This document shows, in pieces, positions 3,218 through 22,100 of a stretch of 64,000 nucleotides of DNA. The DNA lies in assembly GCA_002269645.1 (NCBI GenBank), contig NIVC01001816.1:170302-234301 (forward strand), given 5' to 3'. This DNA is from Macrostomum lignano (taxonomy: Eukaryota). Position 1 is the stretch's first letter. Each line of letters begins with the position of its first letter. Position numbers and translations under genes: made by a program. The notes below the pieces were generated by a model, which was given only the letters and a program-made list of their open reading frames with translations, searched no databases and had not been told where the DNA came from.

Positions 3218-4075
3218 AATTCTTCTATGCTTTTGTATGCTGCATCATAAGCTTGAATAAATATAGTTAAGAGTTGTAAGCCAATGATTGTGCTAAAATG
3301 AATTTGTATTTTTTCTTTGTATACCAAATGTATATTAGCCAAAGCATTTGTATTCCAGAATTTTCCAGCATATACTATACCTGCAATATGGTATAGTTAT
3401 AGAAACACATACTTTCTATATCTAGTTACAAGTACTATTTTAACACTAATAGGATAAAACTAATAGGATAAAAAACAAAATTTGTTGATATCTGAATAAA
3501 AGCCATCAGATATTTGCCTAGACTACAGAATTTTAGGAAATTCTAGATTCATAGAATAATTACTTAAAACATTTTAATTATAATTCATAAGTGAAAAACT
3601 TTTTATGATATCATTTTTAGTATTTTTGGTAAATATATAGCCAGTTTATTTTGCTTTTATTAAAAAATCTCATTTTAATTTTCTAATAATCATCAAAATG
3701 AGAAAAGATATATCCCTATCTCCCCTCCTAGCTAAACTACTATTTAAGTATTTCTTATTTTGTTCTATTAGTATTCATATTCTATATCATATTGCAAACT
3801 GTTAAAAGCTAGAAAGTATTTAGCTATCTAGTAAAAAATATGCCAATGCCAATAAAGTAAGTCAATTAAGTGTAGAGTTCTGCTATAGCTATGGATATGG
3901 CTATAGGAAGTTATAGATAGAGATTTTTTGGCAAAGCATAATATGGATACAAGTAATGTTTATAGTTATGGCAACATACCTAGTTTATGTATCTAGTAAT
4001 TGAGAATTGAAAGACCATTGTAGCTATTAATTTAATAGGGTTACAGTAGTTGAAATAAATGAATATTTATAGTTT

Positions 4076-4272
4076 TGTAAGACCGTGGGTTGAATTGCAG
4101 TGAATAACAAAACGTGAGGAGACCTCACTGGCTCACGCCAATATATTTAATGCCAAAGTTGGGGTGGGTGTAACCACCCTAAGAACGCACACGCTGCAGC
4201 GCTAAAACCTCAACCCCCAAACCAGCCAGACGTGCACATTTAAGTGCACGCGCACCAACAAGCCAGCCTACA
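4076..4272 (-). repeat. 3' LTR (~197 bp) of the Gypsy element
   Basis: On the minus strand it starts TGTAG (plus 4268-4272) directly after polypurine tract AGGGGGAAAGTAG (plus 4273-4285) and ends TTACA (plus 4076-4080). Canonical TG...CA termini. Confidence 0.85.
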
Positions 4273-6325
4273 CTACTTTCCCCCTAGAAGCAAAAGACAG
4301 TTCCAGAGTCAAGCAAAGCCCGCCATGTACAAGTCAGGTGGCCGCCGCTCTCTCGCCGACCGCCGCGGAATCGTGACCAACTCGGCCGGTGCCGCCGGCT
4401 GCTCCTCTGGTGCCTCGTCTGCCTGCAGCTCGGGCCAGGTCACCGCGTCGCCGCCAGGATCGACCGCCTGCCTGGGGGGCTCAGCGGCGGTGCCGTCGTT
4501 GTCGGAGTCGGCGGCTGGTGGTCTGCTGCGGCCGGAAGCTCCAGTGACGCCCGCCGCTGCACGAAGCGCTTGAGGTGGTCGTGGTGCACCACCAGCCGGC
4601 GCCTCAGGACTCGGTACGGCCCCTTCCACTTGGCGCTCAGGCACCGCGTCTGGCCGCGCTTGACGAGCAGCATCACGAGCTGGCCCTCTTCGAACGGCAC
4701 GAACCGAGAGTCCTGGTTGGCCAGCCGGTTGCGCTCGACCTGGGCGCTCCGCAGTCGGCCGTGCACCGTGTCGAAAGCGCTCTGCAGGTTCTCCTGAGTC
4801 CGCCGCAGGAAGCCGTGATGTCCACCGTCGGCTGCCGGCCGGTCGCCGCTTATCAGCCAGCTGTCGAGATCCAGCCTCAGTGGCCAGCCGTGGAGGACCT
4901 GGTACGGACTGAGGCCGGTGTTGCTGTGCACGGAGGTGTTGTAGGCCCAGGTCACATACGGCAGCTTGCTGTCCCAATCCTGCTGGTTCTCGGCCACCGT
5001 CGTCGCCAGCATATCGCCGAGCGTCCGGTTGCCTCGCTCGACGATTCCGTTGCCACTCGGATGAAACGGCGACGTGCGCGTCTTTTCAACGCCCAGCTGC
5101 TCGCAGAGCCGGCCAAACACCTCGCTCTAGAATTGCCGTCCCTGGTCACTGTGCAGCACCTGAGGAGCGCCGTGACGCAGAACCACCGACTTGAGCAGTG
5201 CATCCGCCACCGTCACCGCGTCGATCGCCGCCAGGGCTGCCGTCTCTGGTCTCCATCCACTTTGAAAAGGCGTCGCACATGCTCAGGATGTACGCCTTGC
5301 CATCAGTCGTACGCGGAAGCGGCCCTTTGATGTCGATCTGCACCAGCTGCCACGGAGCCGTCGGCTGGCACGTCGATTGTAGCGGCGCCTTCTGCGGCTT
5401 GGTTGGACTCTTCTTGGCGAGGCAGACCGCGCAGCTGGCCACCCAGTTTTCGACGTCCCGTCGCAGACCAGGCCACCAGCAGCGCTCAGACAATCTCGCT
5501 CCGGTCCTGTCGACGTCTAGATGTCCGCTCTGGTCGCACGAGTGCGCCTGCTGCAGGAAATGTGGCCGCAGGTGACCGGGAATGACTGGCCGGCCACCCA
5601 CCAGCCGGACACCCGCCGAGCTCACCGAGGCCTCGTCCAGCAGCTCGCGAACCTGCGCCGCCCATGAATCGGACAGGCTGTCAATCCCTTCGGTCAGCGC
5701 CTGGAACGCCTTGCTCAGCAGCGGGTCTTGCAGTTGCTCCTCATGCAGGCGGCTGTCGTCCCACCGAGGCTGCAGGCGCGTGCCGGCCATCCGGCTCAGC
5801 GCATCCGGAACGACGTTGTCCCTGCCAGGCCGGTACAGCAGCTTGAACGAAAACTGCTGCAGCGTAGAAAGCCATCGCGCCAGCCGACCTTCGGGGTCCT
5901 TCTTTGTCAGCAGACCTTGCAGTGGCCGGTGGTCCGAGTAGACTGAAGCTCGGGACACTCAGCAGGTACGTCCTGAAGTGCTTCAGACTCCAGACCAGCG
6001 CCAGCAGCTCGCGGTCGGTCGCCGAGTAGTTGCGCTCGGCCTTGTTGAGGGTGCGGGAGGCGAACGCCACAGGCAGCGCAGCTGAGCACGAACTGCTTGG
6101 TAAAATCCGGCAGCCTCAGCACCGGAGCCGTCGTCAGCCGGTCCTTCAACTCGCGGAACGCTCGCTCGCAGTCGCTGCTCCACGCGAAGTCCCTCGATTT
6201 CACGCTGACGTCGTGCAGGACCCTCGCCGTCTGGCTGAAGCCTGGGATAAACCGACGGTAGAACCCCAGCATTCCAAGAAACCGCTTCACCTCCTCGGTC
6301 GTCGTTGGGCTGGGCATGCTGCATG
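4076..6325 (-). mobile_element. 5'-truncated, degenerate Gypsy/Ty3 LTR retrotransposon (RT end, RNase H, integrase, PPT, 3' LTR)
   Basis: Frameshifted minus ORFs carry KRFLGMLGFYRRFIPGFS (RT thumb), [23 protein letters not shown] and YSDHRPL (RNase H), H-H-C-C zinc finger (HSCDQSGH...CAVC), SPFHPSGNGIVER (rve) and KWKGPYRV (GPY/F). Gypsy domain order RT-RH-IN. Small deletions remove e.g. the RNase H TDAS motif. Confidence 0.95.
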
Positions 6326-7483
6326 AATAGGGTTACAGTAGTTGCAATAAATGAATATTTATAGTTTCATATTGAAAGAGTCCCTGGAAGTTTCAAAGTC
6401 CCTAGAAGTTGGGACTCTAGCATTAGCATATATTGTTAATGCCATTTCCACATTTTGGTTGGGTGGTAGGAGCTAAATTTAACATGAAAGTTTTCACTTT
6501 TAAAGGGGAGCTCTTAAGTCACTTCAATGATTTAAAGACTTTAACTTAGCAATGGAAAATTTCAATGCATAAGATTGAAGAAAAAATATTTATTAGTTTT
6601 AAAGCAAATCCTAGGCAATTTCTTCAACAATTTTGGCATGGCCCTAACAGATAATAGTAAATGCTAAGCCTGCCAACTTTGCAAATCAAGGGTATGGTCA
6701 GACTGCCAAGTTTGTACTGTGGATTCATAGTTATATAGAAGCTCTCTGCATTAGCCTTTAGACAGTCTTTTTGTCATGGCTCAATTGAAAAAAGCATAGA
6801 CTGGTTTGCTAAATTAACTGTACAAGATAGAATCATTGTACATGGGAATTAGTGTTGTGTTTTATGCACTTATTTAGTGTTGAGCCAAAGGCTATTATCA
6901 AAAGAGCATAGCTTAAGTTGAATGTATATTTTGTTTAATGCATATTCTATGGTTTAAGGATATATGTCAAGGCAAGCCTTTATAGAGTCAGTCAGTAGCT
7001 GTTTAGGACAGACAAATAAGTTAACACTGGGACGACAACTTGGAATAAAGTTACCTTAGTACATTGGAATTGGATCGGTATACAACAATTAGCCAAGCCC
7101 ATTCTTGGATGGAATACTCAGCTGGACCCTAGACAGAGGCATTGTTAAAGAGAAATATTAGAATAGTTTCAGATAATGATCAATTGTCACAAGACCTCTG
7201 ACACCATATAAAAAAACTAATAATTAGCACTGGGTTTCCCTACTGATTATTAAATTGCTTGCTAATAGTATTAAATGTATTGAAATAGCTATAATTGTTT
7301 TATTTCAAGGAATAAAAGCAATAAGGAAGATCAGTATATAGGATGTACAGAAACAGCTATAGTTGTTGATTTAAAAAATGATTATTGTACTTTTGTTTAT
7401 GTGCTAAGTTATAAGCACTTTTATTTATCAAAATTTTAAGGAAAAGTCAATATTAGTTTGTTTAACTTTCTAATTTATTTCAG

Positions 7484-10400
7484 AAACTCTGCCAGTTCTG
7501 CAATGGTGAGGTGGCCAGAGCCACTCTGTCGCACGATAAGGCCTGCTTAGATTGCGGCGCAGTGCAAGACCAGGCTGTTAAAGTTGATTCAGCCACTGGG
7601 GCAACAGTTTTAATGGGTAGTTGCGAGCTTGTCACCGATCCAGATGCCGTTGGTGGAGCGCCGTTTGATACTGAAGGCGTTGCATTTGCTCAGGTAACTC
7701 ATTTGTTTAATGGTGTCAGTAGCTGACCTGATTCAGGTTAGGTTTTGGGTTTTGGTTTAAATTATGCTTTAGGTTAAGATTTAGGTTAGGGTTGAGGTTA
7801 GGTTTAGATTAGGTTTAGATTAGGTTTTAGATTAGGGTTTAGATTAGGGTTTAGAATGGGGTCTAGGTCAGGTTTTAGGTTAGGGTTTAGATTTGGTTTT
7901 AGATTAGGGTTTAGGTCAGGTTTTAGGTTAGGGTTTAGATTTGGTTTTAGATTAGGGTTTAGGTCAGGTTTTAGGTTAGGGTTTAGATTTGGTTTTAGAT
8001 TAGGGTTTAGGTCAGGTTTTAGGTAAGGTTTAGATTTGGTTTTAGATTAGGGTTTAGATCAGGTTTTAGGTTAGGGTTTAGATTTGGTTTTAGAATAGGG
8101 TCTAGGTCAGGTTTTAGGTTAGGGTTTAGATTTGGTTTTAGATTACGGTTTAGGTCAAGTTTTAGGTTAGGGTTTAGATTTGGTTTTAGATTAGGGTTTA
8201 GGTCAGGTTTTAGGTTAGGGTTTAGATTTGGTTTTAGATTAGGGTCTAGGTCAGGTTTTAGGTTAGGGTTTAGATTTGGTTTTAGATTAGGGTTTAGGTC
8301 AGGTTTTAGGTTAGGGTTTAGATTTGGTTTTAGATTAGGGTCTAGGTCAGGTTTTAGGTTAGGGTTTAGATTTGGTTTTAGAATAGGGTCTAGGTCAGGT
8401 TTTAGGTTAGGGTTTAGATTTGGTTTTAGATTACGGTTTAGGTCAAGTTTTAGGTTAGGGTTTAGATTTGGTTTTAGATTAGGGTTTACGTCAGGTTTTA
8501 GGTTAGGGTTTAGATTTGGTTTTAGAATAGGGTCTAGGTCAGGTTTTAGGTTAGGGTTTAGATTTGGTTTTAGATTAGGGTTTAGGTCAGGTTTTAGGTT
8601 AGGGTTTAGATTTGGTTTTAGATTAGGGTCTAGGTCAGGTTTTAGGTTAGGGTTTAGATTTGGTTTTAGAATAGGGTCTAGGTCAGGTTTTAGGTTAGGG
8701 TTTAGATTTGGTTTTAGATTACGGTTTAGGTCAAGTTTTAGGTTAGGGTTTAGATTTGGTTTTAGATTAGGGTTTACGTCAGGTTTTAGGTTAGGGTTTA
8801 GATTTGGTTTTAGAATAGGGTCTAGGTCAGGTTTTAGGTTAGGGTTTAGATTTGGTTTTAGATTAGGGTCTAGGTCAGGTTTTAGGTTAGGGTTTTGATT
8901 AGGTTTTAATGTTACGGTTTACCGTAGATAAAGTTTTAAGTTAGGGTCTTGCTTTGGGTTCAATTGAATTTAGTTAAAAGTTTAGGTTAGGGTTTATATT
9001 TTAGATAGACTTGGATTTAATATTAGGGTTAGCAGTGTCACATTCTGGCAGTCAGTTGTCGTAGACGAGGAACTAATGATCTGTAATTCAGTCCAGTGCT
9101 GTCTGGCCTATACTATATCAATCTCAAATTCCAACTACCAGGCCCGGTCTCGAGTGGCTCTGGCTCGCTGCTTGGGTGTATCTAATGTAAACTCAAATGC
9201 TAATCGTGCAACAACAACTACTACTGATAGTAATAAGCTGTTGCTTCGAACGCCGCTTGGTCGCAGGATGTCTCGCAGGCTGGTTGGCCTGTCGCAAACG
9301 CTCGGCATTCGCAATCAAAGCGATTTAGACCGGATTCGCCTGGCGCTCGGACAGTTATTGGCCGAGAAGCCGAATATTCGAGAGTCCGGCCTGCGTGGCA
9401 AGTTAGCCTGCGTATTGCACCTGCTGTGTCCGGGGGTTAGTCTGGCAAAAGCTAAGCTTGTATGCCAGGCGCCTTCTTGCGCCAGTCTGAAAATTATGGA
9501 GTCTGTTAAACGTTCTCTAGTTGAACGCGGCTGGAACCTGACTGGAGGGTCCGCTGCGGCTTTTCTATGTGAAAATAATGATGTAAGTGGCAAATCTTGC
9601 TAGTTAATGTACGTTTGAGGCAACAATTTAATCAAGAGAGCATTGAGAAAGGAAATCCAGTTAATGTACATCCAGATATTGGGGTAGGAAATCCACTTAA
9701 TGTACATCCAGATATTAGGGTAGGAAATCCACTTAATGTACATCCAGATATTGGGGTAGGAAATCTCGTTAATGTACATCCAGATATTAGGGTAGGAAAT
9801 CCACTTAATGTACATCCAGATATTGATGTAGGAAATCCCGTTAATGTACATCCAGATATTGGGGTAGGAAATCCACTTAATGTACATCCAGATATTAGGG
9901 TAGGAAATCCCGTTAATGTACATCCAGATGTTGGGGTAGGAAATCCCGTTAATGTACATCCAGATATTAGGGTAGGAAATCCACTTAATGTACATCCAGA
10001 TATTGGGGTAGGAAATCCACTTAATGTACATCCAGATATTGGGGTAGGAAATCTAGTTAATGTACATTGAGATGGGGGTAGGATATCCAGTTAATGTACA
10101 TTGGGATGGGGATAGGAAATCCAGTTAATGTACATTGGGATGAGGGTAGGAAATCCAGTTAATGTACATTGGGATGGGGGTAGGAAATCCAGTTAATGTA
10201 CATTGGGATGGGGGTAGGAAATCCACTTAATGTACATCCAGATATTGATGTAGGAAATCCCGTTAATGTACATCCAGATATTGGGGTAGGAAATCCACTT
10301 AATGTACATCCAGATATTAGGGTAGGAAATCCCGTTAATGTACATCCAGATGTTGGGGTAGGAAATCCCGTTAATGTACATCCAGATATTGGGGTAGGAA

Positions 10401-11266
10401 ATCCACTTAATGTACATCCAGATATTAGGGTAGGAAATCCCGTTAATGTACATCCAGATGTTGGGGTAGGAAATCCCGTTAATGTACATCCAGATATTAG
10501 GGTAGGAAATCCACTTAATGTACATCCAGATATTGGGGTAGGAAATCCACTTAATGTACATCCAGATATTGGGGTAGGAAATCTAATTAATGTACATTGA
10601 GATGGGGGTAGGAAATCCAGTTAATGTACATTGGGATGGGGATAGGAAATCCAGTTAATGTACATTGGGATGGGGGTAGGAAATCCAGTTAATGTACATT
10701 GGGATGGGGGTAGGAAATCCAGTTAATGTACATTGGGATGGGGGTAGGAAATCCAGTGAATGTACATTGGGATGGGGGTAGGAAATCCAGTCAATGTACA
10801 TTGGGATAATCGATGCAATGTACATGAAGTGCATTCTCACCCACCACTCCAGAACGCATTCTACTCTCTGCTATCGCCCGATGGCGCTGCTCGTTACGCC
10901 AGCTCAGAAGTGGCAGCGGACGCGGCCGCACTGACGGACACTCTGGCATCGTCTTGGCGAGCCAGCAGCATTGCTAGATCACGCCTGCGACGACTCGGCC
11001 TTTACTTGGCTCTGATGAAGCACGGTCTGACTAAAGGCGAGATTCTGACAGCTCTAGCCGGGCCGATCAACCAGCGGGATCTTCATTTATTTTCTGAGGC
11101 CAAAGAGCAGGCTTTGAGACTGTTGCGCCTGCATCCGCTGTTGCAGCATCGCGCAGACTTGACCGAAGCTCAACTGCATCGCTACCTGCAGGATCTCATC
11201 GATTGGAGGCAGCGGCTTGTGAAGGAACGACTGGCGCTGGTTGGCGATGCCGATTGCCCCCTGTAG
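7484..11266 (+). CDS. BRF2: Divergent TFIIB-family factor, most like BRF2 (TFIIIB 50-kDa subunit); 5' exon/start codon not found
   Basis: Three phase-0 exons join in frame: 7484-7693, 9142-9582, 10853-11266 (354 aa + stop). They have AG/GT sites (cag|gtaact, gat|gtaagt). Exon A has zinc ribbon CQFC-x14-CLDCG. Exon B has cyclin-fold-like RRLVGLSQTLGI...ACVLHLLC. Exon C has L-x7-W-x15-YLA and DLIDWRQRLV, paralleling my recollection of human BRF2 (LVELANETW...TFLA; DLLQHRQSLV). Confidence 0.65.
7735..8920 (+). repeat. Telomere-like (TTAGGG-derived) 48-bp minisatellite
   Basis: Unit ttaggtcaggtt-ttaggttagggt-ttagatttggtt-ttagattagggt. Period 48 (taggtcagg at 7864, 7912), roughly 22 copies, inside the intron of the BRF2-like gene. 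Confidence 0.9.
9653..10822. repeat. 36/34-bp intronic minisatellite with two-block higher-order structure
   Basis: 36-bp unit AATGTACATCCAGATATTGGGGTAGGAAATCCACTT followed by 34-bp units TTAATGTACATTGGGATGGGGGTAGGAAATCCAG. The whole pattern occurs twice. Confidence 0.9.
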
Positions 11267-11894: not shown

Positions 11895-12715
11895 ACCAAT
11901 CAGTGAAATCCCAATCAGTGAAATCCCAATCAGTAGAATCCCAATCAGTGAAATCCCAATCGGTGAAATCCCAATCAGTGGAATCCCACTCAGTGGAATC
12001 CCAATCAGTGCAATTTTCTCAGTGGAATCCCAATCAGTCAAATCCCAATCAGTGAAATCCCAATCAGTGAAATCCAAATCAGTCAAATCCCAATCGGTGG
12101 AGTCCCAATCGGTGGAGTCCCAATCAGTAAATCAGTGAAATCCCAGTCAGTGGAGTCCCAATCGGTGGATTCCCAATCGGTGGATTCCCAATCAGTGGAA
12201 TCCCAATCAGTGGAATCCCAATCAGTGGAATCCTCTCAGTGAAATCCAAATCAGTGGAGTCCCAATCGGTGAAATCCCAGTCAGTGGAGTCCCAATCGGT
12301 GGATTCCCAATCAGTAAATCAGTGAAATCCCAGTCAGTGGAGTCCCAATCGGTGGATTCCCAATCAGTGAAATCCCAATCAGTGGAATCCCAATCAGTGG
12401 AATCCCAATCAGTGGAATCCTCTCAGTGAAATCCAAATCAGTGGAGTCCCAATCGGTGAAATCCCAGTCAGTGGAGTCCCAATCGGTGGAGTCCCAATCG
12501 GTGGAGTTCCAATCAGTGGAATCCCAATCAGTAAATCAGTGAAATCCCAGTCAGTGGAGTCCCAATCGGTGGAGTCCCAATCGGTGGAGTCCCAATCAGT
12601 GGAATCCCAATCAGTGAAATCCCAATCAGTCAAATCCCAATCAGTCAAATCCCAATCAGTGGAATCCCAATCAGTGGAATCCCAATCAGTGGAATCCCAA
12701 TCAGTGGAATCCAAC
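11895..12715. repeat. 15-bp minisatellite (AATCAGTGGAATCCC)n
   Basis: Directly visible tandem unit with variants. Confidence 0.9.
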
Positions 12716-12782: not shown

Positions 12783-13028
12783 ATGAGTTCGAATCCTACA
12801 AACACATTTATTGCTGCTTTTAAATCGAAACTCCGCACAGTGCCGAAGCACAAGCTGGTCACGGTGTTTCTGTTTGGCAGCTTGTTCTCGAGCGGTATTG
12901 GCTACTATAAGTATAGGTTCTCTGACGATCACAGGTTAGACTTTATCGAGGCTGAGCTTGCTGAGATGAGAGCGAGGACTCGATTGCAGCAGCAGCAGCA
13001 GTTGGAATCCGCTCGCCAAGCGAAGTGA
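12783..13028 (+). CDS. Small (81 aa) predicted single-pass membrane protein, function unknown
   Basis: ATG preceded by branch-like CTGACTAAT, a pyrimidine tract and AG (12771-12772). Hydrophobic segment LVTVFLFGSLFSSGIGYY, then a charged helical tail with poly-Q like other host exons. GC/CpG-rich relative to flanks. Confidence 0.55.
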   Translation: MSSNPTNTFIAAFKSKLRTVPKHKLVTVFLFGSLFSSGIGYYKYRFSDDHRLDFIEAELAEMRARTRLQQQQQLESARQAK

Positions 13029-13091
13029 CCGCTTTTACTGCCTGCTTTTTGCTTGCTGGTACTGACTTCTTTGTTAAATCGCTAGAGGCAG

Positions 13092-13355
13092 GTGTGAGAT
13101 CTAGAGAGGTAGATGTGAGATCTAGAAAGGTAGATGTGAGATCTAGAAAGGTAGATGTGAGATCTAGAGAGGGAGGTGAGATCTAGAGAGGGAGGTGAGA
13201 TTTAGAAAGGGAGATGTGAGATCTTAAGAGGTAGATGTGAGATCTTAAGAGGTAGATGTGAGATCTTAAGAGGTAGATGTGAGATCTAGAGAGGGAGGTG
13301 TGAGATCTAGAGAGGGCGATCTGAGATTTAAACAGGGAGGTGTGAGATCTAGAGA
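13092..13355. repeat. ~17-19-bp minisatellite (GTGAGATCTAGARAGG core)
   Basis: Visible tandem units with AGATCT palindrome. Confidence 0.85.
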
Positions 13356-14204
13356 GAGTTGTACCGATACGCACCGTAGCTTTCAGGCGGAGTAGCTCGA
13401 GTTTATTTATTACGCTTTTAATATTTTCATATCACTTTAATAGCATAAATTTTGTCACAGTCGTTAAAATGTATTCAGCTATAGTAAATACCGATGTACG
13501 TTGTTTAAATAAAATTCTAATTTATGTCATGCTTGAATTGTATGCTAAGAACTCGAATTTAATTAGCTATTAACTATTTGAATATTTTATTTGAGCATGC
13601 ATGTACACTCTGTGCAAACAGTAAACATGGAAATGAATTCTTTAATGAATTAATTAATTTAAAAAACGCAGTTAAAATCTAATTTATCTAATACATAGAT
13701 AATTCTTTATTCTACGCAAAGAAACGTGTGTATAATTTAACAAAATTCATGTCTTGTACATGGTAAGGATCGCATGCATTTACACGGCGTGTACATGAAT
13801 TATGGTTACGGTTAGCATTGCGAAATATTTGTGGGAATATATAAAAATTGTTTTCTTATTTATAGAAGTCAACGAACAGAAAATGAATCTCTGGGTCTAA
13901 AAATATAAAAATATGGAGATCAACTACGTAATTAATCATTTTTAATTGCGGGTTGTTTTGAAAAGTTACGCTTGCAGTTAAGCTCGAGTTTTTATAAGAA
14001 TCGAATTTTAACAAAAACTACTAATAGTAGTTAAATAGTTTTTTGCGGTGTAGAAATAGGGAGATAAAAATAGTAAATCGGATTTCGCATCCAACACATT
14101 TTTCATGTTGCGTTTGCAACATCCAACATGATACATACAATGGGTGTGAGCACCCTGTGTTGCAGGGGAGTAGCATATGGCGCCTTTTGCACATAGTGAT
14201 GGCG

Positions 14205-15140
14205 ACAAATTATGAAATGGCGCCCCAATAACTAAGATGGTGCCACCACAACTCAAATGGCGCCACCAAAATTGAAATGGCGCCACCAAAACTGAAATGG
14301 CGCCACCACAACTAAAATGGCGCCACCAAAACTGAAATGGCGCCACCACAACTGAAATGGCGCCACCACAACTGAAATGGCGCCACCACAACTGAAATGG
14401 CGCCACCACAACTGAAATGGCGCCACCACAACTGAAATGGCGCCCCCATAACTGAGATGGTGCCACCAGAACTTAAATGGCGCCACCACAACTGAAATGG
14501 CACCACCACAACTGAAATGGCACCACCAAAACTGAAATGGCGCCACCACAACTGAAATGGCGCCACCACAACTGAAATGGCGCCCCCATAACTGAGATGG
14601 CACCACCACAACTAAAATGGCGCCACCAAAACTGAAATGGCGCCACCACAACTGAAATGGCACCACCAAAACTGAAATGGCGCCACCACAACTGAAATGG
14701 CGCCACCAAAACTGAAATGGCGCCACCACAACTAAAATGGCGCCACCAAAACTGAAATGGCGCCACCACAACTGAAATGGCACCACCAAAACTGAAATGG
14801 CGCCACCACAACTGAAATGGCGCCACCAAAACTGAAATGGCGCCACCAAAACTGAAATGGCGCCCCCATAACTGAGATGGTGCCACCAGAACTTAAATGG
14901 CGCCACTACAACTGAAATGGCGCCACCAAAACTGAAATGGCGCCACCACAACTGAAATGGCGCCACCAAAACTGAAATGGCGCCCCCATAACTGAGATGG
15001 TGCCACCAGAACTTAAATGGCGCCACCAAAACTGAAATGGCGCCACTACAACTGAAATGGCGCCACTAAAACTGAAATGGCGCCACCACAACTGAAATGG
15101 CGCCACCACAACTGAAATGGCGCCACTACAACTGAAATGC
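14205..15140. repeat. 20-bp minisatellite (CGCCACCACAACTGAAATGG)n
   Basis: Exact 20-bp register across many lines; explains the spurious 'GGAISVVVAPFQLWWRHFS' ORFs. Confidence 0.95.
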
Positions 15141-19173: not shown

Positions 19174-22100
19174 CAATACGATACAACACAGCAAGCATAG
19201 CTCAATCCAGGTCATTAATTCCAATTCCAATTTGCCAAGCTGTGTCCAACACTTGCGTGCGCGTGACTTGAAAGCTGAGCAGGGAGAGAGAGTGACGGAC
19301 TGCGGCAGACAGCAATCCAACCCAAGCAGCGCCCGTGCTGCATGCATTGATCAGCTGTTGAAACCACAGCACAGATTTGCTACGCATGCATTGCACTCGC
19401 CCCAAACATTCATATATTCGTAGAATCTCACCTGAGACTGTCATCTACAGGATGTACATGTAATCTCAACTGAGACTGTCATCTACAGGGACAAAATCTC
19501 ACATGAGATTGTCATGTACAGGTATTGAATTTCACATGAGACTGCCATCTAGAGGAATAGAATCTCACCTGAGACTGCCATTTACAGGGACAGAATCTCA
19601 CCTGAGACTGTCATCTACAGAGATAGAATCTCACCAGAGCCTATCATGTACAGGTATAGAATCTCACCTGAGACTATTGTCTAGTTCTCAGTAATCAAAC
19701 CCAGGTACTTTACGATAAAACAGGCGTACTAACCGCAACCGACTCTGCTTAACTTTCGCCCGCCCCACTCACCAGTCTGGATGCAGTCGAACGGAATCGT
19801 GAACTGGCCAATAAAGTCGTCACCGATTGCGTCATCGTCCAGCACCACGAGCCGCAGCAGGGCCAGCTCAGGCAGACTTACCCGGAACTCAAAGCACTCA
19901 TCGAATACCGGATTATAGCCGTTGCCATGCACCGTTTTCGTCCGCTCTTCAGAACAGTCAGCGGGCAGGCCGAACACTTCCACAACAACGCAGGGGTCGG
20001 TGACGTCGCCCTTAGCAACGGAGCCGCGTGGCTTCGGCAGCTGCGAGCCGCTGATGACGCGAATATGGAGGCTGTGCGGCGCCAAGTCCGAGCCGCCTCC
20101 GCCGCGCTGGGCGAGGAAGGCGAAAGTCTGGCGCATAGCGCCCGGCTTCAGCACGAAGCCGCAGGAGCCGTTCTTAGAAAACTGGCCTCGGTTTAAATCG
20201 GTCATGAGGCCGGGAGTCTGATGGTTGAGGCAGACCAGCTGACAGCCGCAGCTCCACATGTCCTGAGGGTTGTAGTTGCTGGAGTCCACCCGGATGGCGT
20301 TGGGCTGCACCTGCACCAGGCAGCGCCGGCTGTACTCCACCAGGCCGTCCATGTCCGACTGGGCCAGACGGAATGCGGCCGACTCGCTGATTGACCAAAC
20401 CTGCTGATGGAGCAGCTGGTGCTGCTGCTGGTGATCAGGCTGACGACGGGAGGCCGCCTGCGCCGAGTCGGATTCTGGGAATGAGGACAGGAGTAATTTT
20501 TGTTGGATTTTCCGAGCTCTGCAATTTGGATTTTCTTGGGGTTCCCCCGGGTTGGATTTCCTTTTGGCCTCCCGAGGTGGATTTCTTTGGGGTTCCCTGA
20601 GGTGGATTTCCTTGGGGGTTTCCCGAGGTGGATTTCCTTGAGGTTTCCCGAGGTGGATTTCCTTGGGGGTTTCCCGAGGTGGATTTCCTTGAGGTTTCCC
20701 GAGGTGGATTTTCTTGGGGGTTTCCCGAGGTGGATTTCCTTGAGGTTTCCCGAGGTGGATTTCCTTGGGGGTTTCCCGAAGTGGATTTCCTTGGGGTTTC
20801 GTAGGCGGACTTTATTGAGATTTTCCTACGTGGATTTTCTTGGGGTTTCACCCGGGGGTGGATTTCCATGGGGTTTTAGAGATTTCTTAGAAAATTATGA
20901 AATTTCCTGAGGATTTTCCAAGATTTATTAATGACTTTTGGGATTTTCCAAGACTTCCATGGAACTGAAAAGGACTTTTCCCAGGATCTAGTTGAGAAAA
21001 AAATTCTTTTTTCAGAACTTTTCAACTCACTATAAAAATGGAAGCAGCAGTCGTCCAAATCCGCGAACCGCTCGGAGCCCAGAGCTGCCAGATCCGACAG
21101 CTCCTGGCTCAGCTTGATCCGCCTGCCGCACTGCTGCTGCTGCTGAGGCGGCGGCGGCGGCTGCTGCTGCTGCTGCTGCTGCTGCAGGGACTGGTGTGAC
21201 TGATTTCCAGCCTTTTTAAACGCCTTGGGACTTCGATCGCGCTGAATATCCACATTGTCGTCCTCTTCGCTGACGTAGCCGAAGGCGACTGCGCTTTGCT
21301 GCACGGTGGCCACCTGCCGTTCGCAGCCAGCCGAAGCGCCACCTTCTGGCGGAGGCGGCAGCTTCTTGCACTTCACCAGGATGCGTCGGCGAAGTCGAGA
21401 CGGCGTCAACAGCCGAGGATCCGACAGCAGTTGAACGTCCGACTCGCTGGCAGAGCCGGGGTCCAGCAGCCAGTCGCCAAGGGTGGAACGAATGAGCTGC
21501 ACCATGCGGCACTGCTGGGCCAGGCTGCAGTGGTTCTCGATGCTCAGGATTAGCGGCATGCTGCGGGAGGGTTGAGGTGGCGCGTGCCAGACTCGTTGCA
21601 TCTTGAGGATCTTGAGGAATTCCCCTTCTCGGGGATTCCCATCTTGAGGGATTTCCCCTCCATAGAGATTCCTGATCTTGAAGGATTTCCCATCGTGAAG
21701 GATTTCCCATTAAGATGGATTTGCATCCTGGGGGATTTCCCATCTTTATAGATTTAAAATCTTGAGGGATTTCCCATCTTTAGGGATTTCCGATCTTGAG
21801 GGATTTCCCATCTTTAGGGATTTCCCATCTTGAGGGATTTCCGATCTTGAGGGATTTCAAATTTTGAGGGATTTCCCATCTTGAGGGATTTCGCATCCTG
21901 AGGGATTTCCCATCTTGAGGGATTTCGCATCCTGAGGGATTTCCCATCTTGAGGGATTTCGCATCCTGAGGGGTTTCCCATCTTGAGGGATTTCCCATCT
22001 TTAGGGATTTCCCATCTTGAGGGATTTCCGATCTTGAGGGATTTCCCATCTTGAGGGATTTCCCATCTTTAGGGATTTCCCATCTTGAGGGATTTCCGAT

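What the first reader, a model, noticed from the sequence alone, without database searches (positions are those of the whole stretch)
7484..11266. Hidden, highly divergent BRF2-like (TFIIB-family) transcription factor that appears to lack the C-terminal TBP-anchor/redox region
Seen: three exons missed as a unit by the ORF track splice in phase 0 into a 354-aa frame with a CxxC-x14-CxxCG zinc ribbon and two helical repeats. Knowledge (recalled human BRF2): zinc ribbon, two cyclin folds, a W-x15-F-L-A spacing in fold 2, a 'DLLQHRQSLV' helix, then ~100 aa with the Cys361 'molecular pin' and TBP anchor. BRF2 drives type-3 Pol III promoters (U6, 7SK) and is absent from Drosophila and C. elegans. 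Inference: this is a BRF2-lineage protein with the same spacing (SSW...LYLA; DLIDWRQRLV). The TGRHP motif is replaced by SSIAR and the protein stops ~14 aa after that helix. It could be a minimal BRF2, a dominant-negative or a neofunctionalised general transcription factor paralog.
Basis: partly seen in the sequence, partly recalled or inferred. Interest (0 to 1): 0.75.

Follow-up and report, generated by a model that had tools for sequence, protein, structure and literature searches.

The report
Divergent TFIIB-like factor gene in flatworm
The three exons are real and match an already annotated but unstudied Macrostomum lignano gene; its protein most likely belongs to the TFIIB family of polymerase-recruiting factors, but the specific claim that it is a BRF2 is not shown.

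Summary
Exons 7484-7693, 9142-9582 and 10853-11266 (+) have AG/GT boundaries and join in phase 0 into 354 codons plus a stop. The product is 100% identical to NCBI PAA63754.1, "hypothetical protein BOX15_Mlig003425g1, partial" (Macrostomum lignano), so the gene is not hidden in public annotation. Exon 1 starts at a TTTCAG acceptor. The species' spliced leader ends in ATG, which would be in frame (M-KLCQFC...) and would explain the "partial" label.

By sequence the protein is an orphan. Exhaustive phmmer over 1.84 billion proteins finds only its own M. lignano cluster. Pfam, PDB, hhalign and filter-free HMM tests against BRF2 and against a mixed TFIIB/TFB/Brf1/BRF2 profile are at chance. Only the N-terminal zinc-ribbon region scores above shuffles.

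Fold evidence points to the family. A single-sequence AlphaFold model of residues 101-354 has a 5-helix first domain (pLDDT 65-81). Its 31 best PDB matches are all TFIIB-like proteins, human BRF2 first (E 0.006-0.03). BFVD and the poor full-length model also rank TFIIB-like proteins first. No E-value is below 0.001.

TFIIB-like membership is probable and BRF2 lineage is unresolved. The missing BRF2 tail is real in every public model.

The parts
7478..7483 (+). 3' splice acceptor TTTCAG directly before exon 1; probable spliced-leader trans-splice site
   Evidence: Sequence. It matches the M. lignano trans-acceptor motif [T/C]TNCAG (PMC8629364). An in-frame TAA lies 7 codons upstream with no ATG between. 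The NCBI CDS is 5'-partial and starts exactly at 7484.
7484..7693 (+). Exon 1 (70 codons): zinc ribbon plus the start of the linker
7490..7558 (+). Zinc ribbon C3-x2-C6-x14-C21-x2-C24-G25 (CQFC...CLDCG)
   Evidence: The N-terminal 105 aa is the only segment above shuffles: Z about 5 against yeast Brf1 and 3.3-4.5 against a reptile BRF2. UniProt name 'TFIIB-type domain-containing protein' for paralogous entries.
7694..9141 (+). Intron 1, GT..AG, mostly a 48-bp minisatellite (7735-8908)
9142..9582 (+). Exon 2 (147 codons): linker plus the first helical repeat
9253..9531 (+). First cyclin-like 5-helix domain (about residues 108-200)
   Evidence: AF2 truncated model: five helices, pLDDT 65-81. Foldseek top hits are TFIIB-like cores.
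9583..10852 (+). Intron 2, GT..AG, mostly a 36-bp minisatellite (9650-10801)
10853..11266 (+). Exon 3 (137 codons plus TAG at 11264-11266): second, longer helical region
   Evidence: All public models share this C-terminus.
10955..11011 (+). W252-x15-Y268LA, the candidate equivalent of the Brf1/Brf2 TBP-stacking Trp and helix H3'
   Evidence: for positions. Gouge 2015 on W215. The equivalence rests on a MAFFT alignment only.
11192..11221 (+). DLIDWRQRLV inside the long terminal helix (residues about 322-348), the candidate counterpart of the BRF2 'arch'
   Evidence: The HMM alignment of this piece scores only -4.2 bits.

Best explanation
This is the Macrostomum lignano gene Mlig003425.g1. It is one of at least three near-identical genomic copies.

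Inferred start: the mRNA is most likely trans-spliced at 7484, and the spliced leader's terminal AUG supplies the initiator Met. That gives a 355-aa protein beginning M-KLCQFC.

Protein: an extremely divergent member of the TFIIB-like family of initiation factors. It has an N-terminal zinc ribbon, a linker of about 80 aa without the TFIIB EWRxF reader motif, a 5-helix cyclin-like repeat, and a longer second helical repeat that ends in a long helix. Nothing follows that helix.

Inferred mechanism, by analogy with the family: the ribbon docks on an RNA polymerase, the linker reaches the active-site cleft, and the two cyclin repeats clamp TBP (or a TBP paralogue) on promoter DNA.

Which polymerase it serves is unresolved. 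Three features lean towards a Brf-type (Pol III) factor: the Brf1-like N-terminus, the Trp at the Brf1/Brf2 TBP-stacking spacing, and the BRF2-like length of the second repeat. Its overall tail-less architecture, however, is that of TFIIB.
For: Gene model:
- Canonical phase-0 splice sites and only frame 0 open.
- 100% identical to the transcript-based NCBI model (annotation method in PMC5730564).
- The ORF is kept intact in three loci, with only one in-frame 3-nt indel, while the upstream flank carries 6 gap events.

SL-AUG start:
- The spliced leader ends in ATG and the trans-acceptor motif matches (PMC8629364).
- Flatworm SL AUG is used as an initiator (PMC9851317, citing Cheng 2006).
- The CDS is 5'-partial exactly at the acceptor.

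Family:
- Ribbon spacing, N-terminal Z about 5 against yeast Brf1, and UniProt 'TFIIB-type domain' names.
- AF2 first domain of 5 helices with pLDDT 65-81.
- Foldseek against PDB: the top 31 hits are all TFIIB/TFB/Brf1/BRF2, followed by cyclins.
- Foldseek against BFVD: top hits are giant-virus TFIIB-like proteins.
- Even the poor full-length model puts TFB/TFIIB/Brf1 in its top 8.
Against: - No sequence method detects any relative. phmmer over 1.84e9 representatives finds only its own cluster, Pfam gives 0 hits, and PDB phmmer gives 0 hits at E<=10.
- The family HMM scores -1.8 bits, a score reached by 36% of shuffles. The cyclin segments give Z from -1.6 to 2.1.
- No Foldseek E-value is below 0.001, TM-scores are 0.25-0.36, and the models are single-sequence with mean pLDDT 55.5 and 38.5.
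- dN/dS among copies is 0.5-0.9 on 7-15 substitutions, so purifying selection is not shown.
- One copy (g4) has lost the AG acceptor.
- I saw no expression or SL reads directly.
Confidence: 0.65

Rival explanations
1. It is the flatworm orthologue of BRF2. It has diverged beyond sequence recognition and has lost (or never had) the molecular pin and TBP anchor. It works with SNAPc at type-3 Pol III promoters (U6, 7SK, tRNA-Sec).
For: - Five human BRF2 chains are the best PDB matches of the better model (E 0.006-0.03, probability >=0.97, 260-288 aligned columns), against 200-217 columns for TFIIB.
- The second helical region (about 148 aa) matches the length of the BRF2 C-repeat plus arch (PF21886 covers 168-305), not the roughly 100 aa of TFIIB or Brf1.
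- In a MAFFT alignment the BRF2-specific insertion aligns with SPDGAARY against SPSVPAKY, W-x15-[FY]LA is kept, and DLIDWRQRLV aligns with the arch DLLQHRQSLV. The arch is the SNAPc interface.
- BRF2 evolves fast (human-reptile about 59%), so loss of detectable similarity in a flatworm is plausible.
Against: - The BRF2 HMM is at chance, hhalign gives probability 1%, and PF21886 gives no hit.
- BRF2 does not appear at all among the hits of the full-length model.
- In human BRF2 the anchor domain is required for TBP binding and the pin for the ternary complex. Both are absent here.
- I could not check whether M. lignano has a canonical BRF2 elsewhere.
Confidence: 0.25
2. It is a lineage-specific, fast-evolving paralogue of TFIIB itself (Pol II), for example a tissue- or germline-specific general factor variant.
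For: - Its architecture is exactly that of TFIIB/TFB: ribbon, linker, two repeats and no C-terminal extension.
- TFB and yeast TFIIB are the first hits of the full-length model, and viral TFIIB-like proteins lead in BFVD.
- TFIIB-like expansions are known in plants (PMC7865254, listed).
Against: - It lacks the EWR[TA]F B-reader motif and the GRxP loop of repeat 2.
- The second repeat is about 45 aa longer than in TFIIB.
- The N-terminus resembles Brf1 more than TFIIB (Z 5 against 2.3).
Confidence: 0.25
3. It is not a TFIIB-like factor at all. It is an orphan zinc-ribbon plus helical protein, or a decaying young gene family, and the fold matches are artefacts of low-confidence all-helical models.
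For: - All sequence tests are negative.
- Foldseek E-values are all >=0.006 with low TM-scores.
- dN/dS is not clearly below 1, and one copy has a broken acceptor.
- No Logan (run-assembly) protein of it is in the database.
Against: - Three searches, two models and two libraries all put the same small family on top, out of 350,542 PDB chains.
- That family is the one predicted beforehand from the ribbon.
- The ORF of 354-355 codons is intact in all three loci.
Confidence: 0.2
4. It is the missing or divergent TAF1B/Rrn7 (Pol I) orthologue.
For: TAF1B/Rrn7 are the known precedent for TFIIB-like factors that sequence searches do not see. In line with that, phmmer with TFIIB finds Brf1 and BRF2 but no Rrn7.
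Against: - No Rrn7 or TAF1B chain appears among the top 50 Foldseek hits listed, nor among the 31 hits of the full-length model.
- No Pfam Rrn7 hit.
- Those proteins are 500-600 aa with a C-terminal extension (my knowledge).
Confidence: 0.05

Closest known systems
Human BRF2 (TFIIIB50), core residues about 1-314 (PDB 4ROC/4ROD, 8ITY)
   Same: - N-terminal ribbon at the very start of the protein.
- Two helical repeats, the second about 147 aa long and ending in a long helix.
- Best Foldseek matches of the better model.
- The W-x15-[FY]LA spacing and a short DL[IL]x[HW]RQxLV match.
   Different: - No detectable sequence or profile similarity.
- The TGRHP loop is replaced by SSIAR.
- The K113/K114 dyad is not evident.
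- There is no molecular pin (LPPC/C361) and no TBP anchor. The protein stops 14 aa after the arch-like motif.
TFIIB / archaeal TFB
   Same: - Overall architecture and size: ribbon, linker, two cyclin repeats, no tail (316 and 300 aa against 355 aa).
- Top hits of the full-length model and of the viral library.
   Different: - No B-reader EWRxF motif and no GRxP loop.
- A longer second repeat.
- No PF00382 or PF08271 hit.
- Canonical members find each other by plain phmmer, but this protein finds none.
Yeast/human Brf1 N-terminal half
   Same: The best pairwise score is to the Brf1 N-terminus (MxxCxxCxG...CxxCGxV...GAxVxxGS; Z about 5). A Trp is present at the TBP-stacking spacing.
   Different: The whole Brf1 C-terminal half (homology regions I-III, the TBP/Bdp1 interface) is absent. 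The cyclin segments are not similar above chance.

Membership tests
TFIIB-like factors (TFIIB/TFB/Brf1/Brf2/Rrn7-TAF1B) | N-terminal C-x2-C-x(14-17)-C-x2-C zinc ribbon | tested here: met
   CQFC-x14-CLDCG at residues 3-25. The N-terminal segment scores Z about 5 against Brf1. UniProt names paralogous entries 'TFIIB-type domain-containing'. Pfam PF08271 gives no hit.
TFIIB-like factors (TFIIB/TFB/Brf1/Brf2/Rrn7-TAF1B) | Two cyclin-fold repeats after a linker | tested here: inconclusive
   For: the Foldseek top hits are all TFIIB-like (E 0.006-0.5), and the first domain has 5 helices with pLDDT 65-81. Against: PF00382 gives no hit, the family HMM is at chance, and the second repeat is modelled at pLDDT below 55.
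TFIIB-like factors (TFIIB/TFB/Brf1/Brf2/Rrn7-TAF1B) | Binds TBP-DNA and recruits an RNA polymerase | not testable with these tools
   Needs biochemistry or ChIP.
BRF2 | BRF2-type C-terminal cyclin repeat (Pfam PF21886) | tested here: not met
   No hit at E<=10 with the whole protein or with exon 3 alone. The BRF2 HMM with filters off scores -1.6 bits. Human BRF2 scores 233.7 bits.
BRF2 | Arch helix (residues 291-314, the SNAPc interface) | tested here: inconclusive
   A long terminal helix is predicted and the DLIDWRQRLV / DLLQHRQSLV match exists, but it scores -4.2 bits.
BRF2 | Molecular pin (LPPC, C361) and TBP anchor domain (374-419) | tested here: not met
   The protein ends at residue 354. 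All six public models share that stop. There is no LPPC and no BRF2-tail-like ORF anywhere in the window. The features are defined in PMC4671959.
BRF2 | TBP-stacking Trp (W215), shared with Brf1 | tested here: inconclusive
   W252-x15-YLA has the same spacing, but the equivalence depends on an unsupported alignment.
TFIIB proper | B-reader/linker motifs (EWR[TA]F) and TFIIB repeats recognised by PF00382 | tested here: not met
   The motif is absent in the alignment and PF00382 gives no hit.
BRF1 | C-terminal homology regions I-III | tested here: not met
   The protein ends after the second repeat.
TAF1B/Rrn7 | Rrn7-type ribbon and cyclin domains plus a C-terminal extension | tested here: not met
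   No Pfam hit. No Rrn7 or TAF1B chain among the Foldseek hits listed.

The most novel reading that the evidence does not exclude
Flatworms carry a minimal, tail-less BRF2-type factor. It would be a Pol III (or SNAPc-linked snRNA/SL-RNA) initiation factor that keeps the ribbon, both cyclin repeats and the SNAPc-binding arch. It would work without the TBP anchor and the redox-sensing pin, both of which are essential in human BRF2. That would place BRF2 outside vertebrates and show that the tail is a later addition.
Probability: 0.2. Interest if true: 0.7.

Novelty: new member of a known kind. Interest (0 to 1): 0.42.

Why it matters
Animals are usually credited with four TFIIB-like factors: TFIIB, BRF1, BRF2 and TAF1B. 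Gouge et al. 2015 describe BRF2 as found only in vertebrates.

A fifth, or hyper-divergent, family member in a regeneration model with RNAi and transgenesis would be a tractable case for two questions: how far these bridging factors can drift while keeping the fold, and whether a Brf-type factor can work without a TBP anchor.

It is also a clean example of a flatworm gene whose start codon probably comes from the spliced leader. That would explain why the annotation calls it 'partial'.

As things stand, it is an uncharacterised and already annotated gene with fold-level evidence only.

Tried and rejected
Sequence searches that found nothing:
- Pfam on the whole protein and on each exon product: no hit.
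- PDB phmmer at E<=10: no hit.
- Exhaustive phmmer of 1.84e9 representatives: only its own cluster.
- The 5.8e9-protein search at E<=10: only three M. lignano entries. Two earlier attempts timed out.
- No deeper alignment could therefore be built.

Comparisons with known family members:
- BLASTP against human BRF2: short, non-colinear pieces only.
- hhalign against a 16-species BRF2 alignment: probability 1%.
- hmmsearch --max with 2000 shuffles against the BRF2 profile and the mixed family profile: at chance.
- Test for an internal repeat between the two helical halves: negative.

Structure:
- Full-length single-sequence AF2: pLDDT 38.5, unusable as a model.
- I considered feeding AF2 an alignment of the query with BRF2 orthologues and rejected it, because the alignment would impose the fold and test nothing.

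Other checks:
- dN/dS and exon-versus-flank divergence among the three loci: too few changes to be informative.
- Search for a BRF2-like tail or LPPC motif in all six frames of the window: none.
- The 81-aa gene downstream is a small membrane-type protein, not a detached tail.
- Rfam and tRNA scans of the window: nothing.
- Literature searches for the gene id and for BRF2 in flatworms: nothing.
Full report
**1. Observation**

The window is Macrostomum lignano assembly Mlig_3_7, contig NIVC01001816.1.

- Exons 7484-7693, 9142-9582 and 10853-11266 on the + strand have canonical AG|...|GT boundaries. They are 210, 441 and 414 nt, all phase 0, and splice into 354 codons plus TAG.
- Frame 0 is the only open frame in each exon. 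Exon GC is 52-58% against 32-40% in introns and flanks.
- Both introns are almost wholly minisatellites: a 48-mer x24.5 and a 36-mer x32.6.

**2. Already annotated**

- The 354-aa product is 100% identical over its full length to NCBI PAA63754.1, 'hypothetical protein BOX15_Mlig003425g1, partial'. The called gene span of 3783 nt equals 7484-11266.
- Near-identical copies g3 and g4 lie on two other contigs in the same neighbourhood, with a phospholipase C gene downstream on the opposite strand.
- Three UniProt entries come from the older assembly. Two are named 'TFIIB-type domain-containing protein' and one, a frameshifted model, 'LisH domain-containing protein'.
- From my knowledge, such UniProt names are assigned automatically from domain signatures. 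I could not rerun that signature.
- The Mlig_3_7 annotation is built from RNA-seq and de novo transcripts. Transcript ends are cut at mapped spliced-leader and poly(A) sites (PMC5730564). The exon junctions therefore have indirect transcript support, but I saw no reads myself.

**3. The 5' end**

- Exon 1 has no ATG in frame before M44. An in-frame TAA lies seven codons upstream of the acceptor.
- The M. lignano spliced leader is CGGTCTCTTACTGCGAAGACTCAATTTATTGCATG, and trans-acceptors carry [T/C]TNCAG (PMC8629364). The window has TTTCAG|AAA.
- Joining the leader would give ...ATG|AAA CTC TGC..., that is M-K-L-C-Q-F-C, in frame.
- Flatworm leader AUGs are used as initiators (PMC9851317, citing Cheng et al. 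2006).
- This explains why all NCBI models are '5' partial' and start at the acceptor. It is an inference and has not been shown directly.
- Copy g3 keeps the CAG acceptor. Copy g4 has CTG instead, so g4 may be impaired.
- No called gene lies within 8 kb upstream in any copy.

**4. The 3' end**

- All six public models end in ...LVGDADCPL*.
- A BRF2 profile and a search for the LPPC motif over all six frames of the 64-kb window find no tail-like coding piece.
- The next gene on the same strand (12783-13028) encodes an 81-aa protein with one hydrophobic segment. It has no Pfam hit and its own TTCCAG acceptor.
- The absence of a BRF2-type tail is therefore real, as far as the annotation and the window can show.

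**5. Sequence-level homology: negative**

*Database searches*
- Pfam: no hit at E<=10 for the whole protein or per exon.
- PDB phmmer: no hit at E<=10.
- Exhaustive phmmer over 1.84 billion representatives: one hit, its own cluster.
- The 5.8-billion-protein search at E<=10: only three M. lignano entries.

*Direct comparisons*
- I recalled the reference sequences of human BRF2, human TFIIB, Pyrococcus TFB and yeast Brf1. I checked each against PDB chains, where they gave full-length matches at about 2.0-2.3 bits per residue.
- BLASTP against BRF2 gives only short non-colinear pieces.
- hhalign against 16 vertebrate BRF2 sequences gives probability 1%.
- With HMMER filters off, the BRF2 profile scores -1.6 bits, reached by 14.7% of 2000 shuffles.
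- A mixed TFIIB/TFB/Brf1/BRF2 profile scores -1.8 bits, reached by 36% of shuffles.
- Pairwise Z-scores of the two helical segments lie between -1.6 and 2.1.
- Only the N-terminal 105 residues stand out: Z about 5 against yeast Brf1 (MxxCxxCxG...CxxCGxV...GAxVxxGS), 3.3-4.5 against a reptile BRF2, and 2.3 against TFIIB. Part of that signal is the generic Cys pattern.
- Canonical family members find each other easily. TFIIB finds BRF2 at 3.6e-7 and Brf1 at 6e-15 within PDB.

**6. Structure**

- Full-length single-sequence AF2 failed, with pLDDT 38.5.
- Residues 101-354 alone gave mean pLDDT 55.5. They form a five-helix first domain at pLDDT 65-81 and a weaker second half with 7-9 helices ending in a 27-residue helix.
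- Foldseek of this model against 350,542 PDB chains returned only TFIIB-like proteins in the top 31:
  - BRF2 chains first: 9k3b_V at 6.2e-3, 4rod_A at 8.5e-3, then 5n9g, 8iue and 9fsr, all with probability >=0.97 and 260-288 aligned columns.
  - Then human TFIIB (0.05-0.1), archaeal TFB (0.13) and yeast Brf1 (0.15).
  - Then cyclins T2, C, L2, H and K at E>1.
- Against BFVD, the top hits are giant-virus TFIIB-like proteins, at E 0.045-0.5.
- Even the poor full-length model lists TFB, yeast TFIIB and Brf1 in its top eight (E 0.3-2.4). BRF2 is absent from that list.
- No E-value is below 0.001 and TM-scores are low. Each search alone is therefore weak. The repeated, exclusive enrichment for the family predicted from the ribbon is what carries weight.

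**7. Which subfamily?**

*For BRF2*
- First rank with the better model.
- The second region is about 148 aa, like the BRF2 C-repeat plus arch (PF21886 covers 168-305).
- In a MAFFT alignment the query fills the BRF2-specific insertion (SPDGAARY against SPSVPAKY), keeps W-x15-[FY]LA, and ends on an arch-like DL[IL]x[HW]RQxLV.
- Gouge et al. report that W215 stacks on TBP and is conserved in Brf1 and Brf2, and that the arch (291-314) is the SNAPc interface.

*Against BRF2*
- None of this is statistically supported.
- MAFFT always yields a colinear alignment.
- The TGRHP loop and the K113/K114 dyad are not recognisable.
- The pin and anchor are absent. In human BRF2 the anchor is needed for TBP binding and both are needed for the ternary complex.

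*Other subfamilies*
- The overall architecture (ribbon, linker, two repeats, stop) is that of TFIIB/TFB, but the B-reader motif is missing.
- Brf1's C-terminal half is absent.
- Rrn7 and TAF1B do not appear among the fold hits.
- I therefore assign the protein to the family and not to a subfamily, with a lean towards a Brf-type factor.

**8. Constraint**

- Among the three loci, dN/dS is 0.52-0.88 on 7-15 substitutions.
- Exon divergence (1.2-1.4%) is not clearly below non-coding divergence (1.3-3.9%).
- The copies are too young to show selection.
- The only positive sign is that all three keep the full ORF, with one in-frame indel.

**9. Mechanism**

By analogy with the family, and inferred rather than shown:
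- the ribbon binds the polymerase dock,
- the linker enters the cleft,
- the repeats bind TBP-DNA.

Without an anchor or a Brf1-type C-terminal half, TBP binding would have to be TFIIB-like, or be helped by a partner such as SNAPc through the terminal helix.

**10. Verdict**

- TFIIB-like membership is probable (about 0.65).
- BRF2 lineage is possible (about 0.25) but unproven.
- The truncation is supported.
- Novelty: a new, very divergent member of a known kind. Interest is moderate.

Noticed in passing
window 4076-6325 (- strand ORFs 4440-6317): A GC-rich (about 62%) fragment of an LTR-retrotransposon pol gene lies 1.2 kb upstream of exon 1. It has RT_RNaseH, RT_RNaseH_2 and Integrase_H2C2 domains and its frames are broken. 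It is absent from both paralogous loci and is flanked by a 42-bp direct duplication of the target (4034-4075 and 6326-6367).
   Followed up: partly
L001 7999-8000 (paralogue g4), equivalent to window 7482-7483: In copy g4 the AG acceptor before exon 1 is TG (tttctg|AAACTC). The window copy and g3 keep CAG. The next in-frame AG would remove the first ribbon cysteine, so g4 may be non-functional although it is annotated identically.
   Followed up: partly
window 7649 and 9436: The UniProt models from the older assembly use alternative in-frame GT donors. GTTGGT at 7649 drops 15 aa of the linker. GTTAGT at 9436 drops 49 aa of the first repeat. These could be prediction artefacts or minor isoforms.
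   Followed up: no
window 12783-13028 (+): A small annotated gene lies 1.5 kb downstream on the same strand. It encodes an 81-aa protein with one hydrophobic segment, has no Pfam hit, and is preceded by a TTCCAG acceptor. It could share a transcription unit with the TFIIB-like gene.
   Followed up: partly
window 15495 onward (- strand), e.g. ORFs 19729-20352 and 20876-21601: A phospholipase C gene (PH_12, EF-hand_like, PI-PLC-X, PI-PLC-Y and C2; about 1180 aa) converges on the TFIIB-like gene. The arrangement is the same in all three paralogous loci.
   Followed up: partly
window 7735-8908, 9650-10801, 11896-12712, 13084-13356, 14213-15139 and many further sites to 40 kb: Introns and intergenic DNA are packed with minisatellites (units of 48, 36, 15, 21 and 20 bp). 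These create long spurious ORFs on both strands. Copy number differs between the paralogous loci, whose gene spans are 3783, 2760 and 2928 bp.
   Followed up: partly
P0001 (UniProt A0A1I8H5G1): One public model of this gene, from the older assembly, contains frameshifted stretches and is named 'LisH domain-containing protein'. That name probably reflects an assembly or prediction artefact rather than a real domain.
   Followed up: no
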